Assembly (NCBI GenBank): GCA_965655095.1
Contig: OZ296654.1
Span: forward strand, 76,880,001-76,944,000
Reading direction: 5' to 3'
DNA from: Haplodiscus bocki
Taxonomy: Eukaryota
DNA: 64,000 nt
Shown here: positions 1,802 to 63,762 of the stretch, in pieces
How positions within the stretch are numbered: position 1 is the stretch's first letter
How the letters are laid out: each line of letters opens with the position of its first letter
Notes under the pieces: generated by a model
Told to the model about the DNA's origin: nothing
What the model saw: only the letters and a program-made list of their open reading frames with translations
Database searches by the model: none
Program-made: the position numbers and the translations under genes

Positions 1802-2614
1802 ATGCCTCCAAAACGAGCAAAAGCGAGTGTCTCTGATGACAAAGCAAAACACTCAAGATGTGGCCAATGTGAGAAGGAAATAGCAGAGCACGTGGATCCT
1901 TGTATCATGTGCGATGAATGCAGCAGATGGTTCCATGGCGCCTGCGTGTCTCTTTCTTCCGAGGACATCAGGGTGCTGGGGAGGATATCAAACTGCCGCT
2001 GGTTCTGCGATTCTTGTCTTCCACAGACGAAAACAGTCGAGGAACTGGCCAAACAAACTCGAAAGCTAAGTTCCATTGTCAATGACTTACAAACCTCCAT
2101 TACGAAAATTCCGCCTATCGAACTGTCCGATAAAAAAGGAATACAAAATGTAGAAAAGGTATCTCCATCAAAAAAGATTGATGAATACCAATACGAGGTC
2201 CGAGTAAGTGGGATTCCAGAAAACAATGAAGCAAGTCGAATCAAACGTCAGTTCAAAGATAAAGAAGAAGTTGAGAACGTCTGCTCGTCAATCGGATGTA
2301 CATATCCGATTAAAGAATGCAGACGCATTGGGAAATTTGTTGATGGCAGAACCAGAAAACTGCTCGTTACCTTTAATTCTGTCTGGGATGCCAGAGCGCT
2401 GGTAGCAAAGGCTTCTGAAAAGGATTTGTACAAAAACTCACGTGTTCTAATCACGCCTGGCCTGTCAGAGGCAGACGTGAGAAAAGAACAAGTAGTATTG
2501 AAAAATCGATGGGAGTTAATGAATTCTGTAATAAGGAAAGAAGACCTTCGGATACACAAGTTCAGGCTTTACCAATCCACGTCTTCAGGCGAGATAGAGG
2601 TGAAGCTTGATTGA
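1802..2614 (+). CDS. LINE A ORF1: PHD finger, coiled coil and L1/CR1-type C-terminal domain
   Basis: Open 270-aa frame with CGQC...CIMCDECSRWFHGAC...WFCDSC (C4HC3 PHD), then VSGIPE and RRIGK...RKLLVTF motifs typical of CR1/L2 ORF1. Confidence 0.9.
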   Translation: MPPKRAKASVSDDKAKHSRCGQCEKEIAEHVDPCIMCDECSRWFHGACVSLSSEDIRVLGRISNCRWFCDSCLPQTKTVEELAKQTRKLSSIVNDLQTSITKIPPIELSDKKGIQNVEKVSPSKKIDEYQYEVRVSGIPENNEASRIKRQFKDKEEVENVCSSIGCTYPIKECRRIGKFVDGRTRKLLVTFNSVWDARALVAKASEKDLYKNSRVLITPGLSEADVRKEQVVLKNRWELMNSVIRKEDLRIHKFRLYQSTSSGEIEVKLD

Positions 2615-5432
2615 CAACCAACTCTCTGCAAATTATCATTGAAACTATTTTACCCAAATTCGCAAGGCCTTCTATCTCTTGAAAGACGACTGAAAGTTCT
2701 CAATAAATTTTTGTTGAGTACTTGTAGCTACCTGTTCGTTACTGAAACATGGTTCGATAGTCAAACAAGTTCAGTGGTTTTCCCCAACAACACTCCAGCT
2801 CAAATTTGCCGTTCCGATAGAAGCTTGGGAATACATGGTGGTACAGCAGTGTTTGGGTGGGATCCCAGCAAGTCTACTACGTTAACATCTCAGTTCGACT
2901 GTGGTTGCTCTACGGTAATTGAAGGTATTCTAAACTTGCTGATATACAACCCGCCAATTAGCAGTGAATACCGGATCTCTGATAACCGGCTAATGAATTT
3001 CATACAAGAATCTCTTCGGCAATACTCCTGGTCAACTGACGACAAAATATTTCTGATTGGCGACTTCAATTTTCCTGGATTTGATTGGTCATCTTTACCA
3101 TTCAATGATATTCCCAATTATCCTATTTTATCCTCCTTTCTATTGACAAACGGCTTTAACCAATATGTGGACATTGTTACTAACAAGTCTGGGAATACCC
3201 TGGACGTTTTTCTTTGTAACTTTCAAGTTTGTGTCTCCATCGAATCAGAGTTTTGTGACCACTCTGATCATGCTTTGCTACACTTCACACTCTCAACACA
3301 ACATTTACTCCCGGTCGATGGTATGATGCGTAATTCCAGAAGTAGGCTCGTCCTGAATCCAGAGAGGCTTGAGTATTTGAAACTCGATCTTTCAACCAGT
3401 GTTTTTTCTTTTCAAGATGCAACAGCTGATCTTTTCTATTCACAGAAATGGTTTCGGAATTTGCATCAGATATTGCTGGTTTATATGAAAAAGAAAAAAT
3501 TATATCGCCAGTCTTTACCAAATTATTTCTCGTCACATACGACTCACCTAATGAATTGCTTTTAACCCCGATGCGAAGGGAGTTTGTCAAATCGAAGTAC
3601 CTCGTGATTAAGAGAAATCTTTTGCAGTCAATTGAACTGGACACACAACTGTTCTTCGAAAACTTCCTCAAATTCAATACCAAAATGAACGATATTTTCA
3701 AACTTATCGAATCTCTTCGGATGGAAGATCAGTTCCCCAATGAAATGTTTCATAACAAAAACCAGTTTATTGGACCTTTGGAAATTGCGCAGGAATTCAA
3801 TACTTTCTTCATAAGTCAGTTCACACCATGCGATGGACAATACGGAGACTTCCATCCTTCTGTTCTGAACGAAATTGAATTCTCACTTGAAGAAGTCATT
3901 GAAACGCTTCTTCAAACAAGTGATGGTATGGGTTCTGACAACATGTCAGGCGCAACCATTCGGACAATTGCAACTCCATTGAGTGTACATTTTCTTGGCT
4001 TGGCAAGAAGTATCTTGGAAACTGCGAAATATCCTGATAACTGGAAATTGGTTGATGTAAAACCTCTGCATAAAAAACGAGCAAAGAACATTATATCCAA
4101 TTATCGGCCTGTTGCCAATCTCTCCAGGCTATCATTGAGCTTTGAGAAGCTTCTTTTCAAGCACCTATATAAATATATTGCACCGAAAATAAACTCTTCT
4201 CAGCATGGATTTATGAAGAACCGCTCAATAACTAGTCAACTGCTATTGCATTTAAAGTTACTACACGACTCTCTTGACATAGGCGAAGAAGTTTTTACAC
4301 AATATCTCGATTTCTGCAAGGCTTTCGATAAAGTGAATCATTACCTGCTAATTGAAAAATTAAAAAATTTCGGCAATGGTGGGAAACTTTTGCAACTTCT
4401 ATCATCCTATCTAGAAGATCGATCTCAGCGGACGGTAATAAATAACGTCTATTCCGAGTATTTGCCTATAAACAGTGGAGTTCCACAGGGTTCTGTGCTT
4501 GGGCCTCTGCTGTTTTTTGTTTTTATTAATGACCTTCCGGATGTGCTTGAAACCTCTATTGCTTATCTCTTTGCCGATGACACCAAAATTAACACTACAG
4601 ATCCAGCCTTGCTTCAGAATGATCTTCTTAGACTACATCAATGGTCCTTGGAAAAAAAATGCAGTTCAATTTCATCAAAACAAGTTTAATATGGTTCACA
4701 CTGAAGAGAAAGGACATTTAAGAACAACCTGTATGTGTTTTTGGCGGATAAAACATTTCTTTTACTCGAAAGCCAGTTGTTGATTTGGGAATAGGTTTTT
4801 GTTATAATCTGTCCTGGACTGAGCATATCAAGTCGAAAGTTTGTAAAGCTCATGGTAGATTCATCTCCATCGAACGAAACTTGCCAAACAATCTATCCAC
4901 CAGTCAGAAAGCTTCAGTATATGTTCTTTATTTAAGGCCCTTGATTTTATATGGAACCACTGTCTGGTTCGCAAACAGAACTAATTTGGAAAAGTGGGAA
5001 AGCAGAGTCACGCGTTGGATAACTTCATATGACACGTATAAAGAGCGTCTTATTCAAAGCAACATTCTGCCACTGTCTCTTCTGTTTCAGTTAGAGGATC
5101 TACTAACCTTCAACAAGGTTCTGAATGGAAAGCTTGGCCCTGAAGTTCGGTCCCTGATAGAGCCTTCTAAAGCACCTCAACAAAACCTCCGCGAAACTAG
5201 TTTTCTTCCTTTCAAACTCCAAAAAACAAAACTGAAACTGACAGATTCTAATTTCATCCATCGAGCAACGAGACTTGCGAACTTCGTTTCAATGAAACAC
5301 AATATAAATTTCTATGATCCATGTGAAAAAGTCAAACCCCCTTTCAAATCTCTTTTTTGGAATTATTTCCTTAATTCCTACGAAAGGAAATCATGTGCTT
5401 CTTTCATTCAATGCTATTGCTGTCATCTGTAA
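2615..5432 (+). pseudogene. LINE A ORF2: APE endonuclease plus reverse transcriptase, frameshifted
   Basis: TETW, HGG, YNPP, GDFNFP, GNTLD, SDH (APE); NYRPV, QHGF, YLDFCKAFD, GVPQGSVLGP, FADD (RT); Cys-rich C-terminus. Frame breaks near 3555, 4655 and 4750-4785. Confidence 0.92.
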
Positions 5433-50400: not shown

Positions 50401-53400
50401 GAAGGTTAACATTTTTTTTATGTTTAAACTGAAATATTTTCCTCATAATGTTTGAAAACGGAGATCCCTGGATTCCAACAGACTCCCCCAACAGTGATTA
50501 CTTGAATTAAAATTGGTATAATGTAACTTAGGACAAAGGTGTTCCAAACCATCAATTTCCAAAACATCCTTCTGCTAAATAATATCCAATTGTAATGTTT
50601 AAATTGAATATATTCACGGATAAGATTTGAAAATGAATATACCTGGCATCCGCCAAATTTTCCGAACTGCAAACAGTTTTATGGAGAACGGATGATTGCA
50701 ATCCTGACAATATTGTTGAAGAGAATATTTTTTTGAGAACATAATTATGCTGAAAATATCTACATGTGGAAATTTCAATTGGATTATTTTCCAGATAATG
50801 CTTGAGAATGGAGATCCTTGGATTCGACTTTCCGAACTGAGGGAATTGCAATTAAATATGAAGATTGGAAATAAAACAGTGTTTAGAAACTCGCTTTCAG
50901 AAACATCATTTTACTGAAGAAATTATCTAAATTTCTGGGTTAAAATTGGAAAACTTTCAGGATAATTTATGAAAACAAGAGATCAGTGGCTCTCAGAGGA
51001 TTTTTTGAACAACGAGTAATTGCATTGAGAGTGGATAATTGAAATTCGATGAAGAATTAATGGAAACTCTAATGTCTCAGGAAAATTTCTGACTATCCAT
51101 TTCAGTGGTCCATCTTTTATTTCGACCTTTCGCCTCATTTTCTACATTAAAACTGCAAAAAGGAGATTTTATCAAATTTTGCGAATTCCCAAAAAACCAA
51201 TGATTATCAGCACGAATTAGCTTGATTACTATTACAGTGAAGTGAGAAGTAGCATGTGCAGTAATGTAACAATAACAAACTTCGAGTTTTCTGAGTTTGT
51301 CTGGGTCAGTTTCGGTCATGAGTCGTTCCTTCTCCTGTCTGACCTTCTCTTCTCTCCTCTGCTGCTGACTCTCTTGTCTCTGTGAGTGCATCATTTTACT
51401 TATCGTCTCTTCCATCTTCACTCGATTTTTCTCGGCTTTTGCTCTTGCCTAACACAATACAACGCAAAATTTTACAACTCGGAAACATCAATCTCATGCG
51501 TTCAAAAAAACTACTAGCTGCAATTTAGATCAAAAAGAGCTGAATTTACGAAAAAAACACGTGGGTCTAAAAGATTTTTGCTCAATTCCGTTGAATATTC
51601 ATACCCCGCACATTATTTGTTTTATCTAAAGCGTTGCAAATGAGAAACTCATTTGCGAAAAAAGTTCATCATTTTTGACAATAAATATAACACATCATTA
51701 AGGCTTGGAATTGATTGCTCAGGGGTTCAGCTGATAATTTACAACTCCCGGCGTTAACTTTGAAGCCAAAGAGCGCTAAAACAGCGCGAATTTAGTCTTG
51801 AAATGCTCGAAGCAACGTCCCTTTCAAAAAGACGAAAGTTGTATTGTTGGCAAAATTGGAAATAAGAACCGAATGTTCCGGATTTTCAGCTTTAACAGGA
51901 GCTGCCTCAAATTTAATAGGAACCTATTATCGGAAAAGATATTCGGCCGCTCTAACACCTGCAAACCACTCATACAAACAAACTCCACTTGAAACGGATA
52001 TTTAGGCCATACTAAACGACCAAGATGTCTACTCACATCTTTGGACAACTTGATTCGTTTCAGTTTGTCAATGAAGTAGATGACTAATTTGAGACAGGGC
52101 AACATCTGAGCCATATCCTCTGGCTGTGCCCTTCCGTATTTGGGCACTGCGAATCTGGCCTGTAACACTTTCATAGTGCTCCCAGCTCCCACAACTGGAG
52201 ATGAACTTCCTGAAGATGAAGATCCCCCGCTACCCCCAGCGCCAGAGTTGGACGATGTGGAGCCAGATGGAGCTGTGGAATCGTCCGGCTTCTTCCCACT
52301 GTACTGGTCAGATATGTGCAAATACTCCAGCAGGTCCGGATACAGTTTCAGAAACTTTTGGAGCTGAAAAGATGAACTAGACAATAAGACAACAGCTGCT
52401 TTTTGGAAAATTGGTTTCAAGGGTGCTAGCTTCCAGATAAAAAGTACAAAGAGAATTCCGGATTAGAATTCAAGAATGAATGCAAGGGTAATATTTGAAA
52501 GCCTCGAAACCTAAAGAAAAGGTTTAGGAAAATGTAGGAACAAAAGTTTCTTTGATTACCAATTACGCGCATTAAGATAGGGTCAGTTCTTTTCACCTTG
52601 TAGAAATGAATTTCCCAGAGTTCAGTCTTCTCAAAAAAAGTGCTGAAAATAAGTTACCGGAGATTTAAAGACATAAAAATTTTCCTCACTTTCCGGTATC
52701 TTCTGTGGTTGTTAAACCAAAATCAACACTAAACTCTATGAATGTTGGACCAATTCAGGTATGCAAAACACAAAGAAAATCTCATGAAAAATTCAGGAAA
52801 CTTTTCCTTTACGGTTTTCCCATTTTGAGATGTGCTCTACACATCCTTAATTTTTGACCAGAATTTCACACATATAAGATCAAAATTGTAAGACAGAATG
52901 AAATAAATCGCAATCGTTACTTCGGAATCGATGATGAAGTCTGCCACTTCGTGGAGTTCTGACGCGTAACAGTAAGCAGGGCACTTGAACCTCTCACAAC
53001 TCTTGCGACCGTCACAAAAACTGCTCTAAACAGAACAAATCAAGAATGTCTCTATGAATACTAAGAATGAAAGTCAAACTTTATAAAAAGGCAGAGTCAA
53101 TTTTCAAGTTTGATAACTGTTTGCGGTAATATTCAATATTACGCTAATGTTAATGTAATACGTTAATGTAAACTTTGGACCACCCGCAATTTAGACTACA
53201 TGGGTGATAAACTATTGTCGTTTAAAACTTGGTAAAAAAATAGTGTAAAACTTTAGAGTATTTAAAAAACATTCTACGATACGAAGCTAGTAACAAAAAA
53301 GTAAGATAATCAATTGAAAGTGAATGCTCCCAACCAAATCTTGCAGCTCTTTCAAGTTTTTCGTGAGAATCTTTTTGGACCCCAATGCAAAGATGAGCGG

Positions 53401-56299
53401 CTCGAAATCTTCATCCAGAGTTACACTAATTTCCTGCAAAGAAGCAAAACATGCAACTGTATTCTAACCAACCAATGAAATTCCGCACTGTCTAGTATAG
53501 ACTTCTTGTAGCAGTGCTAACCATGAGATCACTAGCTGGCTTCAGAAATCGGCTCATCAACGAAATTATGTCTTGCCGCTTCACAAACTAAAACAGACAC
53601 TTCTCAACAATTGCCAAAATAACAATGAAATATAGAAAGCGGGCATTACAGTCGGCCTTTTTTTAAGTGCCCGACCAATGAAGTGATTTTCCTTGTGATT
53701 TTCAAAGGCTTCTTTAATGATTTCTGCCAAAATTCTGCGCTTGCTTAAACTTTACATACAATGCTGAGTTTTCGACAGAATTAAAAGGTTGGAACTAACT
53801 TTTAGGTCTATCAGCATTCCCTGACATCCGAGTCTGCCTGAGCACCAAAGAGAGAACACGTGTTCGCTCTCCTTCATCAACACAGGCGAGTACTTGTCAC
53901 TTGTGACTGTGGCCACTTCCTTGGCGGTTCCGTCGTCTCCCACCACCGAAAAATTGCGTTCCAAAGTACCGCGCGTTGCTTCCAACCTAACAAATCAAAG
54001 CCTGTTAATAATCCCTTTTCTACTCTTGCCCAAAAGCGTCAAATGTGGAGTGAAGCTTAGTTTCCACCCCATACAAGGCGATAAATTGATGTCCTTCCAT
54101 TGTGAGGCGGGAATGAAAAGCTTCAACGGGGAGAATTTGAGACAAAAGGAAAGGCTTCCAAGTAACATCTGCCGCACTAACCATGCAGAAGCGAGTTTTT
54201 GGTTTTTCTGTCTGCCGTAGATGAAATTGAGCGCATAGGAAACAAGTCCGATGAGGAGAAGGAACTCTAGGTAGAACCCGTCCCATTTAGTCCTCAGGTG
54301 TTCTGGCACGTCAATCACTTTAAGGCCGTCAACTCCTCCTGCCCCTCCAGACCCTCTCTTAGTCGTCTGTCTTTGATGACCAGTTCCTCCTTTGCCTTCG
54401 AGTCCTCCCACACCACCAAGCGCCTCCATTGAAGGTATGGAAGAGTCACGCTGAAGCAAAATGAACAATTCAGTCATTTTTGTTTTGCAATGACCCGTTT
54501 CGTCATACTAAGGTGCACCTATGTACGAATTGTTTTAGGTAAATCAACAAACCATCCCACAGACTGGAGTAACTTGAGTTTTGCCTCGAAATAATTTCTA
54601 TCACAAGCGAATCCACTTTTGCTCAAAATTTCCGCTATTTTGCAAATAAATCCACATAAATTTTCAATTTCTTTGTTTTAATCATTCTATCAACTCTTCC
54701 ATTCAACATATCTTCTTGCTCCACATCCATCATGTTGACGCAAAAAATCATCTCCACCCCGATGATTTCCTATCAAAGCTCAGCTAGCTAATTGACAAAA
54801 TTTCAGGTGGGCGCTTTATGAAATGAAGATGTAGTCGGTGTTTTCTGAATTAAAGATGCCGACTATTACAGTTTCGTTTTTATCGTAAGACATTTCTCTC
54901 ACTTCGAATCGATCCAATTTTAAAACTTTGGTCAATTCTAATTCTTGATGGGAAGAATTGTACCATAGCTTCCAAAACTTCAAAAATCGAAAAAAGTTCG
55001 TGATAGCTGCATTTGCCTATGCTGAAAATTTTGGGAAAAGCACAAACGAAAACATTTTGTAATAAACCAGTTTTGCAAAAAACGGGACATTTTCGAAAAG
55101 CAAACGCCAAAAAAATTGCAATACCCCTTAGTTTCTCCTCGATTATCCGTCAATTCTGCCAGCATGCTTTTCGCCTGAAGTAAATAACCGCCAAAATCGA
55201 TTATACGCCAAATCGGCAAACAATGTTTTTCACGTTTCCTGTTGAAAATAAGACAATCGAAATCAAGTACACTTCCAGTCAACCAACGCCCTCCTTTTTC
55301 CCAGCCAAAAATTGCTGCACCAATGCTTCCGGAAAATCGAGGATTACTATACTTCTCTGTGGTACACAAAGTTTTCTCGAAAAAGAACTTCAAAACAACC
55401 ACCTCCACCATAACTATTTTGAGTCTCACGGATGGTGCCGATTCGGACAATACTTGGCTTGTTACTGTTTACAGAACTAACCTCTTCTTCGACAATAAGG
55501 ACATCGTCGTCTTCATCGGCTTCCTCATCGAATGTTTTGAAATCTTGCATCTCCTCTGCACCTTTGCCTGATTTCACGGAGGAGTGAGCTTGGCCCTGAT
55601 TACCTGAGTCTGCCACCGACTTCAAAGGTCGCTCTCCCATATCTAATGTTTCCTCATCTTCATCAGCATGATGCAGAGAATCCATTAGTACTGCACCTGC
55701 AACAAAAGCAGCGATAAAACCTGAATGAAATTCAATTCCATTTCCTAAACTCAACAATTAATCGCCACTGTTCACATACCGCCAAGCCGTTTGCATCATC
55801 AGAGTCAAACAAATTTTCATGTCATCTCCAGTGGAAAAACGAGAAACTTAGGCTCCAACGCGACAGAGCCTTTGTTTGTTCAGAAACTTATTCCAATACA
55901 TCTGTTCTTTCCAAATGCTCTTTACTTTATCTTCCATTTTGATTTTGGACAAACGTCTTATGGCGATCAAAACAAAAATCGAATGTTCTGACGAAGACTT
56001 CAAGATTAAACTTCCCAAAGCTTAAAAGCATATTTTATAAAGCAGCTTGCATGCCAACCTGGAGACCCTTTATGATGATGCTGGTGGTGGATGGAGGAAG
56101 CCACCCCATCATCAAACTCGTCATCGAACTCGGCAAAATCGTCTTCCACTGAGGTTGCCACAGAGGGAGCAATTCTTCCACTCTTACCATGACTGCTCTG
56201 CTCACTGTGACTGTGCTGGTAGCTGTTCTGGTGCATCTGACCGATAGAGGTCAGCAAGAAAAAGGTACAAGTGATGGCGGTCACAGACAAAATACCCAT
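47416..56299 (-). CDS. CCDC47: CCDC47 (PAT complex subunit / calumin), 10 coding exons, about 582 aa
   Basis: Exons 56299-56059, 55696-55482 (alternative in-frame acceptors at 55720 and 55690), 54450-54182, 53986-53800, 53587-53522, 53433-53335, 53025-52921, 52363-52037, 51448-51281 and 47487-47416. All introns are GT-AG, phases are consistent, total 1749 nt. Signal peptide, acidic lumenal region, TM helix, [45 protein letters not shown] and a C-terminal coiled coil. The start ATG could be slightly further upstream in the same frame. Confidence 0.93.
49080..49905 (+). repeat. Dispersed repeat, copy 2 (inside CCDC47 intron 9)
   Basis: Colinear similarity with 44200-45000. Confidence 0.85.
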
Positions 56300-57974
56300 T
56301 TTTATTCTGAAGCATTTCCGAAAGAGAATTCCTCTGAAGCAAGTATTAAGACCCATATCAGTCGACAACGAATTATTGAACTCTTGGAATTTAGTGCTGG
56401 CGGTATAGTAGGTCATACAACAGCAAAACTGATCATGTCGAAGTATCCAATCATACTTCCTCAATACCAATCGAGTCACATTGAGATGGCAAAACTGTGA
56501 GATGAATACAGTAAATGAAAAATTTAGACTTCTTTCGATCACTCACATGATAGAAGATAAGTATAAACCGAGGTCCTACGGACAATGTAAACTAATGAGG
56601 ACAAAAGTATCACACGACTGCAATAGAAAGGCTTCCCAAATACGTATGCAAATTTTTTTTTCTGAAAAAGATGTTTTTTTTAGAAAATGATTTTTTTTCA
56701 AAATCGGTAAAAGTGGCAAATTTCCTCTAGAATGCGTACCAAAGGACACTTTTTTAAATGTCTCTTTTTACACCTAAATTGAGGTTTTGCATAAAATCAC
56801 GAAATTTTTTAATTTCAAAAATTTGATTCCAAAAAATAAAACTTCCATCCTAAATAGCTTTCTAAACATAGTTGGAGGGCAGAAAATATCCCGATGGTAG
56901 CCGGGTGACTTGTTTTGAAAATTTTACAAATATTTTTTAACTTATGAGCACTACAGTAATCAACCTTTCCTCAGCGACGGATTTGCTTGACAGAGGAAAT
57001 TTTTCCATTATCGAGTTCTGAAATGCAGCTTCTTTGAAATACAACGAACTCATTTGCGATGAAGAAGTTTAGGGTGTTCACGCCAGAAGTGATCGGCAAA
57101 CTCCCGGAATCATTCCGCTTTTCATTTTAGGGAACAACAACCGTAAGTCGAACCACAAATATCAGATGAACTCTCAAAATTTGCCCTAAAAATCAAAAAA
57201 TGGATAATTTGATATTTTTCAATTTTTTTATTCCGTTTGATTTAGTTACTAATTCATGTCCAATTTCATAATAATTCAGGGTTTTTTTGCACAAATCAGA
57301 AAAACTTTAACTTTAGAAAACAATTCTCATAATCTGGACTTATTTTGGTCGATTGTGAAGTTTTCGTCATTTTTTCGCCTTTCATGTCTGGTTTTTCTGT
57401 TGGGATGGCTGGTTCAGTCGCTTGATGGCAACTTCTTGGTCACTTGCATCGTAGTTTGCCCGGATGGGGGCTGGGAGTGCTCTATTCAGTGGGGTCTCCT
57501 CCAAGGTCAATTTCCGTGCGCCCAGCACGGTCGATCTCCGTGGCAGAGTCAAAAATGGATTATCTCAAAAAAACTCTACCTTTCGGGAAGAAAAACAAAA
57601 TTTTGAGTACAGGTACTATATTAGATGGAATCTAGATGAAATTGAAAACTGGCGGAATAAAAATTTGAGAGCGCAATTTTTCCTTATGGTGAATTTGGCA
57701 AATTTCATGTTGAAAAACCTATGTTGGATGAATAATTTCCCTTCCTTATATGAAATACGGGAGGAAAATGACACAGAGGCGAAGCTGTGCTTCACAACAC
57801 TTGCGCCAACAAAATACTAGTGAACAAATCGACGAAATATAACTGATTTTTGAAAGGGCCACAATACTACTAATAACAACTGTACAGAAATTCATTAATT
57901 CTTGTACATTTATATTCAAGTAAGAAATGCTATAAATATTTCATTCGCTTGATATCTTAAAACACTCATCTCAA

Positions 57975-59471: not shown

Positions 59472-59852
59472 AGCCTAATTGTTGTGATAAACTTACATAG
59501 CCTTGTGCTGTTTAATAAGTCAACTTCAGATAAATTGGTTTCCTGGAGAAGTGCTACTGGCTGGAGCTACTGGAACGATCTTCGCAATGAGTAGACCTGC
59601 CAAGGTTGCATCGGTGTCAGCCAGAGACGACAATGGCGAAAAAACAACTGATGAGGATCATGCAAGAGGTGTGATGAGATTGGCAAGGACTGGATGCAAT
59701 ATGATCTATGCCATGCTAGTATCACGATTTTTACTCCGGGTTACCTCTGCCACTTATATTTCAATTGTCGGAAAATACAGCTGAGTATCTCCTGTTTAAA
59801 TGTAAATCTTGCTTTGAGAAGTAGGTTATTCCTGAAACCCCTCGTAAAATTG
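59472..59852 (+). mobile_element. LINE C 5' fragment: leader copy 2 plus frameshifted PHD-finger ORF1
   Basis: Leader at 59472-59529, ATG at 59587, and SCKRCDEIGKDWMQYDLCHA / YHDFYSGL...FKCKSC forming a PHD finger across frameshifts. Interrupted by LINE B. Confidence 0.75.
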
Positions 59853-60088
59853 TTCGAGATACTACTAATTGTTGTGATAAACTTATTAAATAGCTTCAGA
59901 TAAATGAGAGCTTTTGAGTGATATCACACGTTGCCCATTGGACTACCTGCTGGACTACCCACTGCCCACTGGTCTACCCTCTGCCTCACCATCTGTTCTA
60001 TCCACTGGAGTTCTCACCAACTGGGCATCATTTTATTAATATTTAGTTACTGGTATTTTAATTTTACTTACATTCCTTTTATGCAACT

Positions 60089-60891
60089 ATGAACACCCGT
60101 TCTCGAACTGGTTCGACCTCATCTCCATGCAACCAGCAATCATGCCGGAAAGAAGTCAAGGAACGGGGAATTTTATGTGCCCGCTGTGCCAAGTGGTATC
60201 ACGATACCTGTGCTGGCCTGTCCGACGAATCATATAAGGTTAATGGTCAAATACCTGGATGTCTGTGGGTCTGTCCCCCGTGCCTGCCCGTAGCCGAGCA
60301 AATCCTTCGACAACCGCTGGTGGACCCGGAGTTTATACGAACAATTGCAGATGCCTTGAAACCTCTGCATGAGTCAGTCCAATCTCTGAATACGAAGACC
60401 GAAGTCAAGGAATCTGTTCAGGAGGCACTGGGTGAGCTTACACTTTCAACTGCCCCCCGTACTCAGTCTGACGTACGCCTTGAAGTCAGATTTGATGGAA
60501 TACCTGAACCGTCAGGTACAGGAATGCAGAATCTAACTCATGATGAGAACCAGTTGAAAAATGTGTTCCAATTTCTTGGCGAAAGCGACGCCAGTATATC
60601 ATCCGTATCTAGACTTGGGAAGGAAGTTGAAGGTCGTAGCAGGCCCAGAACATTGTGTTGGTGAAGCTTAATACAGAGTGGTCCGTCCGGAAGCTTTTGA
60701 CAAAAGCTAGGAACCTGAAGCAGTATAGTTCCCCGATATTTATGTCACGCATGCTATCGCCGGAGGATCATGAGAAAAAAAAGCTTATCCTGAAAAAGAG
60801 GCGGGAGCTTATAATTCAGGGTACTCCTGCAAAGTAGCTAAAGATCAAAAACCTAAAACTGTTCCACAACAACACTGAAGTACAACTGTGA
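60089..60891 (+). pseudogene. LINE B ORF1 (PHD finger), one frameshift and one premature stop
   Basis: CARCAKWYHDTC...WVCPPC, FDGIPE, RLGK...RPR. Frameshift near 60655, TAG at 60835, natural TGA at 60889-60891 by alignment to LINE A ORF1. Confidence 0.88.
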
Positions 60892-63762
60892 CTATCCTCC
60901 AACCATCTGAGCGTACTTCTCTACAACTGCCAATCATTGATTTCTATCCAACGCAGACTGAAACTCGCCGACTATCTAATAATCCACCAACCAGCAACAG
61001 TGTGTTTAACAGAAACGTGGCTCTCTGATTGCCACTTTGATGTGAACGTCCTTCCAAACTGTAGTTATGGGACAATATCACAGTCGATGAGGAAGTCAGG
61101 CCAACATTGAGGTGTTCTTATAGCTATAAATAACACAGTGGCGAAACGTTATGCTGAGGTGTCGATGCCGGACTGTGACTTTGCCTGTGCTACTCTCCTC
61201 AACTCCGATGCAGGCTTCTGGCTTCTAATTGCAATATACAATCCACCGCGTAATTCAAGTTACTGCTTGGAACCTAATGTTATTACCGGCTGCATAGATC
61301 ATTTCGTATCAACTGCAAGGGGTCTTAACCTCTCAGATGCCCCCATGAAACTTGTCATTGTTGGTGATTTCAACCTCCCACAAGTTAACTGGGTAACATA
61401 TCTTGGTTCAAGCGAGTACTCTCATACTATTCTCAACTATCTTGACTCACACAACCTGATTCAGAACGTAATGGAACCTACACATCGAAGCGGGAATATT
61501 CTAGATTTCGTCTTCGCCGCTGATGGTACAGCTGTAACAGTGGCCAATGTCAATCTTATCTCAGACCATTACCCAATTACCTTTGATCTCGTCCTTGAGC
61601 TTCCAATCATCAGGGGTTCGTCCTCCGTTTCTGTTTATTCCAAATCTTCCTTCAACGAACTCTGTTTTTGGTGGAATCTGTCATTTCTACACAGTTATTG
61701 CGTCTGGAGGAATCCTAATGAGATAACTGTGGGAGACTGGTATTGTCTCTTCAATTACGCCTTAATGAGTTCAATCTCTCTCAAGCGCAAACGTCGTGAA
61801 CTTCCGTATTACTATTCTTCGCACTCAGTTCATCTCCTCAACCAGCAGAGCACGATCACTAGGCATCTGCAGAGACAGTGGACATTGAGGGACGCTCTGG
61901 ATCTTAAGCGTGTTAAGCTTGATGTCACGCGCTCTATTGAATTGGATGAAACGCTGCTCCGATCCGAATTGGGCCCAACGAGTAATTGTTTCCGGTTTCT
62001 GTCAAGCAAGAATAAGCCAATGCCCTCGTGTATGAAACGGCATGACAATGTTGCGTTCTCCGATTCGGACAAAGCCGAGTTATTTAATTCGTATTTCGCT
62101 TCCGTATACAGTGATACCAGTTCCATTGACGCAGTTCACTCAGAGCCATCCAACGGGTCCTCGGGCTCTACTATTCTCCTGCAGGACGTCCCATTTTCAG
62201 TTGATCGTGTTGAGAAACTGTTGTGCAAGATTAATGATAGTTCTACGTACTCGTTTGATCTAGTCCCCCTTTTTGTTCTTCAATCCCAATCATCTAACAT
62301 TTCCACCTCTGTTTTCCCACTCTTTTGCTCCATCCTAAACTGTGCGATATGGCCTGATGTCTGGAAAACCTCTATTATAACTCCTATACATAAAAAAGGT
62401 CGAACAGATGATGTGACAACTTACAGGCCAATTGGTATTCTTCCCAATCCCAAGCTCTCCCTCGTACTCGAGCGCATCTTTTTTGACTTCATATACCCGA
62501 AAGTCCGATCGAAAATTTCCAGGTCTCAGTTCGGTTTTATGTCAAAGAAGTCGACCGTTCCTCAGCTCATAGCCTTCCTTGACAACCTATGCAAGTACTG
62601 TGACGTTAACGAACCGTGTTTTGTCGTCCTTTTTGACATTCAGAAAGCATTCGACACGGTACCGCACTCTCTCTTGATTTCGAAGCTACAGACATACGAG
62701 TTCGATCATAGCTTTCAGATGCTTTTTTCATCGTACCTAACACTCGGACAACAGATGGTCAAATCCAAGGGATGCTTGTCGAGTAAACAAACTATCGGCA
62801 GCGGTATACCCCAAGGCAGCGTGTTGGGCCCGCTGCTGTTCCTACTTTTTGTTAACGATATGCCTGATGTTGTCGTCCTTTCAAACTGTTTCTTGTTCGC
62901 CGACGACTGTAAAGTACAGGGTTCCAACCCAACTTTGGTACAAAACGACATCAACTCTCTAGTAAGCTGGTGCTTGAGGAACAACACGAGGTTTCATCCG
63001 CAGAAAACCCAAGTCCTTTGTTTTGGCAGTACGCATCAATTCCTCCTAAGCCAGAAACCAATTAAGACCGTCGCAACAATCGACGACCTAGGCATCCGTG
63101 TGAGCAGCAACCTCTCATGGAATGCACATGTAGACTGGAAGATCGGTAAGGCGTCGCGTGCTCTATTCAACATTCGCAGCTGTATACCTTTTACAACCAA
63201 CCCAGAGACGAAATTGCGCCCTATTAATTCCCTCTTCCTCCCTATTCTTCTGTAAGGATCCCAAGCATGGTGTCCTAGTATTACATCCATTCGCTCTCTC
63301 ATGACAAACCACTTCAGATGCCTAAAATGGGTTGTTGGCTCTAGCATGGATTACAAGACTTGTCTACAATGACCAAACTCTCTACCTAACTGTTATCAGC
63401 TGATTCTGAGCGACCAAACACATCTTTGGAAAATTTTTCATAATCACCTTGACATCAACTTACCAGATTATATTCAGCTGAATTCTGGCTACTCATTAGT
63501 AAACCGACATCGGCGCACCTTCATCATAAAACACTGTAAGAAGAGAAAAACTGAGGAGTCATTCTTTACTAGAGCGTCTGCACAAGCAAATTATCTTGCT
63601 CTCAGAAATGTTGACATCCCTGATCCCAGCTTCGGGACTTACCGCAAAAATTTTTTATCTTATCTTCATCTACAAGTCTCCGAAAAAGTTAACCTAATTA
63701 ATTCATGTTCATTTCACATCAACTGCTCTTGTTCATTCTGTAGAATGCGTCCACTCGCTTAG
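60892..63762 (+). pseudogene. LINE B ORF2: APE endonuclease plus RT, with in-frame stops
   Basis: YNCQSL, TETW, YNPP, GDFNLP, GNILD, SDH, YRPI, QFGF, FDIQKAFD, GIPQGSVLGP, FADD and C-terminal CSFHINCSCSFC. Stops at 61108, 63253 and 63370, all in a single frame. Confidence 0.92.

What the first reader, a model, noticed from the sequence alone, without database searches (positions are those of the whole stretch)
60871..60960. LINE B has the same junction: in-frame UGA-CUA with no ORF2 start codon
Seen: ...GAA GTA CAA CTG TGA CTA TCC TCC AAC CAT CTG AGC GTA CTT CTC TAC AAC TGC CAA TCA. The stop is at the position homologous to LINE A (EVQL* versus EVKLD*), ORF2 follows in frame, and the first ATG (61087) lies after TETW. 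Known: UGA-CUA is a well-characterised readthrough context in alphaviruses and in mammalian UGA-CUAG genes. Conservation of phase, stop identity and +4 C between two divergent families suggests selection for readthrough.
Basis: partly seen in the sequence, partly recalled or inferred. Interest (0 to 1): 0.72.

Follow-up and report, generated by a model that had tools for sequence, protein, structure and literature searches.

The report
LINE genes split by leaky stop
In a large, old group of animal jumping genes (LINEs), the two genes always sit in one reading frame, split only by the leak-prone stop signal UGA-CUA, so the copying enzyme is probably made when ribosomes occasionally read past that stop; this has not been measured.

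Summary
In LINE B the ORF1 frame ends at TGA 60889-60891, followed by CTA. ORF2 (endonuclease plus reverse transcriptase) continues in the same frame. The first in-frame ATG (61087) lies after both catalytic residues of the endonuclease.

The window copy itself is dead: it has a frameshift near 60654 and private stops at 60835, 61108, 63253 and 63370. The junction, however, belongs to the family: 13 of 15 genomic copies carry TGA-CTA.

I compared 14 deeply diverged lineages (median endonuclease identity 30% among 11 of them), six from this genome and eight from other assemblies and metagenomes. All 14 have ORF1 and ORF2 in one frame, all use TGA, all have C at +4, and 12 have CTA. LINE A has CAA-CCA instead, which fits the CARYYA readthrough motif. 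Only the hexamer TGACTA is conserved; the flanks are not. The spacer length varies but always stays in phase. Nine of twelve lineages checked have no ATG before the endonuclease core. A junction-spanning search of this genome found 124 of 127 non-B matches with TGA.

More distant relatives use other layouts. No downstream RNA structure is predicted.

Best reading (about 0.6): programmed UGA readthrough produces a gag-pol-like ORF1p-ORF2p fusion. The main rival is termination-reinitiation. Readthrough has not been measured. The scan has already flagged this junction elsewhere in this genome.

The parts
59865..63762 (+). LINE B, a decayed full-length copy of a roughly 15-copy family. The 5' end is approximate and the 3' end was not determined.
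   Evidence: Full-length genomic copies begin to align at window 59849-59869. The ORF2 frame ends at TAG 63760. Copies are 94-96% identical to the window copy.
60089..60888 (+). ORF1 of LINE B (PHD finger plus an RNA-binding-like C-terminal part). In this copy it is broken by two extra bases near 60654 and by a private TAG at 60835-60837.
   Evidence: Pfam PHD E=1.6e-5. The frameshift and TAG are absent from other copies and from run contigs. Several copies keep a 276-codon open ORF1.
60889..60891 (+). The TGA stop between ORF1 and ORF2; the candidate readthrough codon.
   Evidence: TGA is present in 13 of 15 family copies and in 14 of 14 lineages.
60892..60894 (+). CTA, the conserved 3' context codon. 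Together with the stop it forms the hexamer TGACTA.
   Evidence: Information content is 2, 2, 2, 2, 1.63, 1.63 bits across the hexamer. Flanking positions average 0.28 bits, with a maximum of 1.01.
60892..63759 (+). ORF2 of LINE B in the ORF1 frame. The APE-type endonuclease Pfam match covers about 61222-61578, with catalytic N12 (60925-27) and E41 (61012-14) upstream of it. The reverse transcriptase covers about 62386-63057. Private stops lie at 61108, 63253 and 63370.
   Evidence: Pfam Exo_endo_phos_2 4.3e-11 and RVT_1 6.1e-28. The profile matches L1 endonuclease structures at 6e-11. Stops are listed.
61087..61089 (+). First in-frame ATG of ORF2 (codon 66), downstream of catalytic N12 (60925-27) and E41 (61012-14).
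1802..2611 (+). LINE A ORF1, intact at 270 aa, with a PHD finger.
2612..2620 (+). LINE A junction: TGA followed by CAA CCA, which fits CARYYA. ORF2 is in frame with no ATG before TETW.
   Evidence: Identical in 30 of 30 copies across subfamilies. At least 90 candidate copies; the 40 scored are 96-100% identical.
2615..5432 (+). LINE A ORF2 (endonuclease plus reverse transcriptase). In this copy it falls into three pieces in three frames.

Best explanation
LINE B and LINE A belong to a large clade of APE-type LINEs whose single mRNA carries ORF1 (PHD finger plus an RNA-binding-like domain) and ORF2 (endonuclease plus reverse transcriptase) in one reading frame, separated only by UGA. The UGA sits in a short context that weakens termination: CUA or CUAG in most lineages, CAA-CCA in LINE A.

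Proposed mechanism: most ribosomes terminate at the UGA and make ORF1p. A few per cent insert an amino acid at UGA through a near-cognate tRNA and continue, giving an ORF1p-ORF2p fusion. This would set a low ORF2p to ORF1p ratio and tether the enzyme to the RNA-binding protein, much as Gag-Pol does in gammaretroviruses.

Shown here: the arrangement and its strong conservation at the nucleotide level. Inferred: that readthrough occurs, how efficient it is, and that the fusion is the active form.
For: 1. Family state. TGA-CTA is present in 13 of 15 B copies, and TGA-CAA-CCA in 30 of 30 A copies across subfamilies.

2. Fourteen lineages. Six are from this genome (A, B, F1-F4). Eight are from other assemblies and metagenomes (L078, L079, L081/82, L083/84, L085, L090, L091, L095). 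All are in frame, all use TGA, all have C at +4, and 12 of 14 have CTA. Endonuclease identity among the 11 aligned lineages is 19-52%, median 30%.

3. Only the hexamer is conserved. Its positions carry 2, 2, 2, 2, 1.63 and 1.63 bits, against a flank mean of 0.28. CTA is 16.6% of Leu codons and 1.8% of all codons in these elements. The chance of 12 or more of 14 is 3e-8.

4. The distance from the stop to the catalytic Glu ranges from 35 to 60 codons, so indels have occurred but always in threes.

5. Nine of 12 lineages checked have no in-frame ATG before the first endonuclease strand. F4 has no AUG there, nor any of the seven near-cognate codons tested, nor AAG or AGG by eye.

6. Genome-wide check. 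A natural junction-spanning query (a copy whose stop had mutated to TCA) gave 127 non-B single-frame matches. Of these, 124 contain TGA, 108 have exactly one TGA and no other stop, and none has TAG alone. At least eight copies have a 1185-codon frame with that single TGA as the only stop.

7. A prediction passed. P0006 grouped inside the clade on the tree, and its locus then proved to have an in-frame TGA-CTAG.

8. UGA-CUAG is an experimentally validated readthrough signal. UGA-CUA alone gave 1.5% readthrough, UGA was the best stop, and CARYYA also worked after UGA (PMC4132726).

9. TGA is not a general sense codon here, because long intact ORF2 frames contain none.
Against: There is no expression or translation evidence. 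No RNA runs were found, and the four runs found are of unknown kind and held only as contigs.

No downstream stimulatory structure is predicted; z-scores run from -0.3 to +2.5. Efficiency would therefore depend on the short context alone.

Three lineages carry an ATG 3-10 codons after the stop, which could serve for reinitiation. Human L1 shows that ORF2 can be translated without its AUG (PMC5009743).

A family in this genome with a 307-codon ORF1 was not seen spanning a junction, and I could not inspect it.

The survey favours in-frame arrangements by design. The unbiased sample is smaller: 10 of 10 top endonuclease hits have TGA-CTA, and 9 of 9 with an ORF1 are in frame.
Confidence: 0.62

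Rival explanations
1. Termination-reinitiation or non-AUG initiation. Ribosomes terminate at UGA and then restart on ORF2 without a fusion protein, as proposed for human L1 and SART1. On this view UGA-CUA matters only because slow termination keeps the ribosome at the site.
For: Human L1 ORF2 translation is independent of its AUG, and SART1 uses coupled stop-start (PMC5009743; PMC5972666). Three of 12 lineages have an ATG 3-10 codons after the stop, and CTG or GTG codons occur in several spacers.
Against: Reinitiation does not need ORF2 to share the ORF1 frame, yet 14 of 14 lineages are in phase despite spacer indels. There is no overlapping stop-start. No conserved upstream motif exists: flank information is low, and TGGGA occurs only once, at -102 in one lineage. 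F4 has no AUG and none of the near-cognate codons tested before the endonuclease core. Reinitiation after a 260-310-codon ORF normally needs a dedicated signal (established knowledge).
Confidence: 0.22
2. The stop is removed at the RNA level, either by A-to-I editing of UGA to UGG or by a tiny intron, so that ORF1-ORF2 is read as an ordinary single ORF.
For: This would also explain the phase conservation and the exclusive use of TGA, since UGA can be edited to UGG (inference).
Against: No stable duplex is predicted downstream of the stop (the region upstream of the stop was not folded). This model would not explain the conserved CUA. No joint is reported at the junction in the contigs laid on the window. 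A GT...AG pair spanning the stop would bound only about 24 nt.
Confidence: 0.04
3. There is no selected function. The in-frame TGA-CTA is inherited from a common ancestor and has simply not yet been lost, or the UGA encodes selenocysteine.
For: All lineages lie on one side of a tree split, so the arrangement probably arose once.
Against: Terminal branches are about 0.9 substitutions per amino-acid site and the flanking bases are randomised, so six neutral bases would not survive. Dead copies do lose the stop (TCA and TGG in two B copies). No SECIS or any other Rfam family was found in the window.
Confidence: 0.04

Closest known systems
Vertebrate UGA-CUAG readthrough genes (OPRL1, OPRK1, AQP4, MAPK10, MDH1; Loughran et al. 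2014, PMC4132726)
   Same: The signal is the same: UGA followed directly by CUA(G). The first six bases are the universally conserved part, no downstream structure is required, and the extension is in frame and conserved.
   Different: There the extension is a short C-terminal tail on a cellular protein. Here it would be a roughly 930-residue enzyme of a mobile element. Readthrough has been measured there and not here.
Gammaretrovirus Gag-UAG-Pol readthrough and alphavirus nsP3-UGA-nsP4
   Same: An abundant structural or RNA-binding protein and a rare polymerase sit in one frame, split by one leaky stop. Several alphaviruses use UGA-CUA(G).
   Different: MuLV uses UAG plus a downstream pseudoknot. 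No such structure is predicted here. LINEs have no protease to release the enzyme from the fusion.
Human L1 and silkworm SART1 ORF2 translation
   Same: Both are bicistronic LINE mRNAs whose ORF2 is made at a low level by an unconventional route.
   Different: L1 has a 63-nt spacer and AUG-independent reinitiation. SART1 has an overlapping UAAUG plus a downstream structure. Neither depends on a shared frame with a single UGA-CUA.
TMV-type stop-CARYYA readthrough context
   Same: LINE A has UGA CAA CCA, which fits CAR-YYA. That motif also works after UGA in human cells.
   Different: It is known mainly from plant viruses with UAG. Among the 14 lineages only LINE A uses it.
Single-ORF CR1/L2/Rex1-type LINEs with 2A peptides or a PHD finger inside ORF2 (Odon et al. 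2013, PMC3708506)
   Same: These are related APE-type LINEs that place ORF1-like modules and the enzyme in a single translated frame (L088 has GGIETNPGP, then PHD, then endonuclease).
   Different: They have no stop at all and separate the products by ribosome skipping. The clade here keeps a stop and has no NPGP near the junction.

Membership tests
Short-context (type II, UGA-CUA/CUAG) programmed stop-codon readthrough | The stop codon is UGA. | tested here: met
   14 of 14 lineages; 124 of 127 junction-spanning matches in this genome.
Short-context (type II, UGA-CUA/CUAG) programmed stop-codon readthrough | CUA, often CUAG, lies immediately 3' of the stop and is conserved at the nucleotide level. 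| tested here: met
   12 of 14 have CTA, and 6 of those have CTAG. One lineage has CTG and one has CAA-CCA. Flanking bases are unconserved.
Short-context (type II, UGA-CUA/CUAG) programmed stop-codon readthrough | The downstream frame is open, in phase and under protein-coding constraint. | tested here: met
   The endonuclease and reverse transcriptase domains follow in frame. Phase is kept across a 35-60-codon spacer range.
Short-context (type II, UGA-CUA/CUAG) programmed stop-codon readthrough | A measured readthrough product. | not testable with these tools
   No RNA, ribosome-profiling or protein data were reachable.
Structure-stimulated (type III) readthrough, as in MuLV or VEEV | A stable stem-loop or pseudoknot lies a few bases downstream of the stop. 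| tested here: not met
   For 120 nt downstream in 7 lineages, z-scores run from -0.29 to +2.51 against shuffles.
Termination-reinitiation (SART1 UAAUG, calicivirus TURBS) | An overlapping or adjacent stop-start with an AUG, plus an upstream 18S-complementary motif or a downstream structure. | tested here: not met
   There is no overlap. Nine of 12 lineages lack an ATG before the endonuclease core. No conserved upstream motif or structure was found.
APE-type LINE of the CR1/L2 group with a PHD-type ORF1 | ORF2 carries an APE-like endonuclease followed by a reverse transcriptase. | tested here: met
   Pfam Exo_endo_phos_2 and RVT_1. The profile matches L1 endonuclease structures.
APE-type LINE of the CR1/L2 group with a PHD-type ORF1 | ORF1 has a PHD finger. 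| tested here: met
   Pfam PHD in the ORF1 of A and B. PHD_Pygo in the ORF1 of L078, L079, L085 and L090.
APE-type LINE of the CR1/L2 group with a PHD-type ORF1 | Placement on a reverse-transcriptase tree with named reference elements (L2, CR1, Rex1 and others). | tested here: inconclusive
   No named references were available. The tree only separates this clade from esterase-ORF1, 2A-type and bird CR1-like relatives.
Selenocysteine recoding of UGA | A SECIS element in the transcript. | tested here: not met
   No Rfam family reached its threshold in the window. The 3' end of B may lie beyond the window.

The most novel reading that the evidence does not exclude
A whole LINE clade, found in this genome and in unrelated assemblies and marine and other metagenomes, makes its endonuclease-reverse transcriptase only as an ORF1p-ORF2p readthrough fusion directed by the bare hexamer UGACUA. 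That would be a retrovirus-like Gag-Pol strategy in non-LTR retrotransposons. It would also show that UGA-CUA is an ancient, self-sufficient readthrough signal in animals.
Probability: 0.5. Interest if true: 0.8.

Novelty: new variant of a known kind. Interest (0 to 1): 0.72.

Why it matters
How LINEs translate ORF2 from a bicistronic RNA is a long-standing open question. A dedicated review of LINE protein biogenesis (PMC3894237) does not mention readthrough, and nine full-text searches found no report of it for LINEs.

This clade offers a sharply defined and easily testable signal: six conserved bases, with natural variants (CUA, CUAG, CUG, CAA-CCA) and natural losses (TCA, TGG).

If it is real, three things follow. 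The Gag-Pol logic of retroviruses would extend to non-LTR elements. The validated UGA-CUA motif would extend beyond vertebrate genes and alphaviruses. And annotation practice would need to change, because gene callers now split or truncate these ORF2s at arbitrary start codons.

Tried and rejected
The wider survey of this genome therefore rests on match tables and on 10 loci already held.
A 3-sequence alignment worked.
- No RNA runs were found. The four runs found are of unknown kind and held as contigs only, so they say nothing about expression or editing.
- Folding found no downstream structure, and Rfam found nothing.
- A single-sequence search of solved structures found nothing. The profile search worked.
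- I considered a spliced-leader acceptor at CTAG supplying an AUG. I rejected it because only 6 of 14 lineages have CTAG, and in the CTAG example I checked by hand (F1) splicing after that AG would leave ORF2 out of frame.
- I rejected UGA as a general sense codon because intact 924-946-codon ORF2 frames contain no TGA.
- The PHD-containing long proteins P0039, P0046 and P0055 are not ORF1-ORF2 fusions of this type. Their PHD lies about 70 residues before the endonuclease, inside ORF2.
- Nine literature searches found no prior report for LINEs. From memory only, and unverified, amber suppression between orf1 and orf2 has been suggested for some Arabidopsis L1-type LINEs.
Full report
**1. What is at the site**

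Window 60877-60894 reads GAA GTA CAA CTG TGA CTA. The TGA is at 60889-60891. Upstream in this frame is the C-terminal part of a LINE ORF1 whose N-terminal part carries a PHD finger (Pfam). Downstream in the same frame is an APE-type endonuclease followed by a reverse transcriptase.

An endonuclease profile built from 11 lineages aligns with the human L1 endonuclease from its residue 6 (E = 6e-11). This places the equivalents of catalytic N14 and E43 at ORF2 codons 12 (60925-27) and 41 (61012-14). The first in-frame ATG, at 61087, is codon 66. A protein started there would lack both catalytic residues.

**2. The window copy is dead, but the junction is the family's**

This copy has two extra bases near 60654 that break ORF1, a TAG at 60835 only 18 codons before the TGA, and further stops at 61108, 63253 and 63370.

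Fifteen copies elsewhere in the 1.5-Gb genome are 94-96% identical to it. In them, position 60835 reads GAG or another sense codon and 61108 mostly reads TGG. Thirteen of the 15 keep CTG TGA CTA; the other two have TCA and TGG. Some copies keep both reading frames open.

Contigs from four public runs of the same organism differ from the window at the private lesions, and no difference is listed at the junction. The kind of those runs is unknown, so they carry no expression evidence.

**3. LINE A**

ORF1 (1802-2611) is intact. TGA lies at 2612-2614 and ORF2 follows in frame with no ATG before TETW. The next codons are CAA CCA, not CUA. That hexamer fits the CARYYA readthrough motif. All 30 copies examined, spanning several subfamilies of a young family with at least 90 candidate copies, keep GAT TGA CAA CCA.

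**4. Survey in this genome**

A protein search with the B endonuclease found 1,844 candidates. Many are only 30-42% identical and have 912-946-codon open ORF2 frames.

I inspected the ten best non-B hits at the sequence level. They fall into four further families, and all ten have TGA-CTA directly before the endonuclease:

- F1: TGA CTAG CC
- F2: TGA CTA TGC
- F3: TGA CTAG TA
- F4: TGA CTA AAT

The nine that still have an ORF1 have it in the same frame.

One B copy has a natural TCA in place of the stop. I used it as a junction-spanning query without reading through any stop. It gave 127 non-B matches in a single frame. Of these, 124 contain TGA and 108 contain exactly one TGA and no other stop. 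None has TAG alone, one has TAA alone, and two have no stop. At least eight copies show a 1185-codon frame whose only stop is that TGA.

This search favours in-frame layouts by design, so I treat it as supporting evidence. A family with a 307-codon ORF1 did not appear as a junction-spanning match. It is a possible exception.

**5. Survey elsewhere**

ORF2 relatives from public assemblies and metagenomes were traced to their contigs:

| Locus | Junction | In-frame ATG after stop |
|---|---|---|
| L078 | TGA CTAG AC | 6 codons later |
| L079 | TGA CTA TTT | none before the endonuclease core |
| L081/L082 (Tara marine metagenomes) | TGA CTG AGA | 10 codons later |
| L083/L084 | TGA CTA CCT | 3 codons later |
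| L085 | TGA CTAG TG | none |

All are in frame with a PHD-type or unannotated ORF1.

On a maximum-likelihood tree, all such lineages lie on one side of a split with 98/99 support. P0006 fell inside that group before I had seen its junction. Its locus, L090, then showed an in-frame TGA CTAG TG.

A scan of JGI metagenomes added two new lineages: L091 (TGA CTA TCC) and L095 (TGA CTAG AC).

Relatives on the other side of the split use other layouts:

- an esterase-type ORF1 followed by TAG and a spacer with many stops (L080);
- an ORF1 overlapping ORF2 in the +1 frame (L086);
- a 340-nt spacer and an ATG (L087);
- a single ORF with a 2A peptide and a PHD finger (L088).

So the trait is specific to this clade, and the method can detect alternatives.

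**6. Strength of the signal**

Across the 14 lineages, each of the bases T, G, A, C carries 2 bits of information and the next two bases carry 1.63 bits each. The 57 flanking positions examined average 0.28 bits.

Endonuclease identity between the 11 aligned lineages has a median of 30%, and terminal branches are about 0.9 substitutions per site. Neutral bases should therefore be randomised, as the flanks are.

CTA is 16.6% of Leu codons and 1.8% of all codons in these elements. Twelve or more of 14 has P = 3e-8 even if a Leu is required at that position. Codons starting with C make up 21%, so 14 of 14 has P = 4e-10.

The distance from the stop to the catalytic Glu varies from 35 to 60 codons. 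Indels have therefore occurred, but only in multiples of three. These lineages share ancestry, so the probabilities are indicative rather than exact.

**7. Mechanism**

The pattern matches short-context programmed readthrough. It has a single UGA, a C at +4, CUA or CUAG, and an in-phase coding extension.

Loughran et al. showed that UGA-CUAG drives efficient readthrough in four human genes. UGA-CUA alone gave 1.5%. UGA outperformed UAA and UAG in this context. CARYYA also worked after UGA. Only about 12 nt downstream were needed (PMC4132726).

I found no downstream structure in seven lineages (z from -0.29 to +2.51) and no Rfam element. Any readthrough would therefore be of this short-context type, probably at a few per cent. 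That level suits the low ORF2p dose LINEs need (inference).

Nine of 12 lineages have no ATG between the stop and the endonuclease core. F4, the family with the intact 1185-codon copies counted, has no AUG there and none of the near-cognate codons I tested.

**8. Rivals**

Termination-reinitiation is the serious alternative, because human L1 translates ORF2 without needing its AUG. However, it does not explain why phase, stop identity and the CUA codon are all held, and no stop-start overlap or conserved upstream motif exists.

Editing or splicing of the stop, selenocysteine, and pure inheritance each fail on at least one observation.

My estimates are readthrough 0.62, reinitiation 0.22, and the rest together below 0.1, with the remainder undecided.

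**9. Novelty and context**

The signal itself and Gag-Pol-type readthrough are well known. Its use by a LINE clade to express ORF2 is not described in the reviews I could read or in nine full-text searches. I classify it as a new variant of a known kind.

The scan has noted the same junction at least ten times elsewhere in this genome. One earlier follow-up reached the same reading for another family. I tested that claim independently here.

Noticed in passing
G000 places listed (e.g. C10:18896532, C7:76678114, C3:37169839): At least eight copies of family F4 have a 1185-codon frame (ORF1 260, TGA, ORF2 924) with no other stop. This LINE family looks recently or currently active.
   Followed up: partly
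G000 places with matches '2-108' and open frame 307 (e.g. C4:56864453, C11:74525628): A family with a 307-codon ORF1 does not show up as a junction-spanning in-frame match. It may be an exception to the in-frame TGA rule, or it may be an ORF1-only element.
   Followed up: no
G000:C11:71545770-71556924; also C10:45874095-45883765 and C4:68796838-68803030: LINE ORF1 or endonuclease matches recur at regular spacing (about 3.6 kb on C11 and about 4.5 kb on C10). This suggests tandem arrays of LINE copies rather than dispersed insertions.
   Followed up: no
L088:32-3463: A Logan contig carries a related LINE as a single ORF: a 2A-like peptide (GGIETNPGP), then a PHD finger, then endonuclease and reverse transcriptase. 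This is the layout described by Odon et al. 2013.
   Followed up: partly
L086:340-960: In this relative, the ORF1 RNA-binding part lies in the +1 frame and overlaps the start of the ORF2 frame. It is a different solution to the same expression problem.
   Followed up: partly
window 51824-56542, minus strand: Host-gene exons, not a LINE. The 160-aa ORF at 53995-54477 resembles the N-terminal membrane region of CCDC47 (judged by eye, not searched).
   Followed up: no
gene calls on public contigs: Automatic gene callers start these ORF2s at arbitrary ATG, GTG or TTG codons a few codons after the TGA. Database proteins of this clade are therefore systematically truncated or split.
   Followed up: partly
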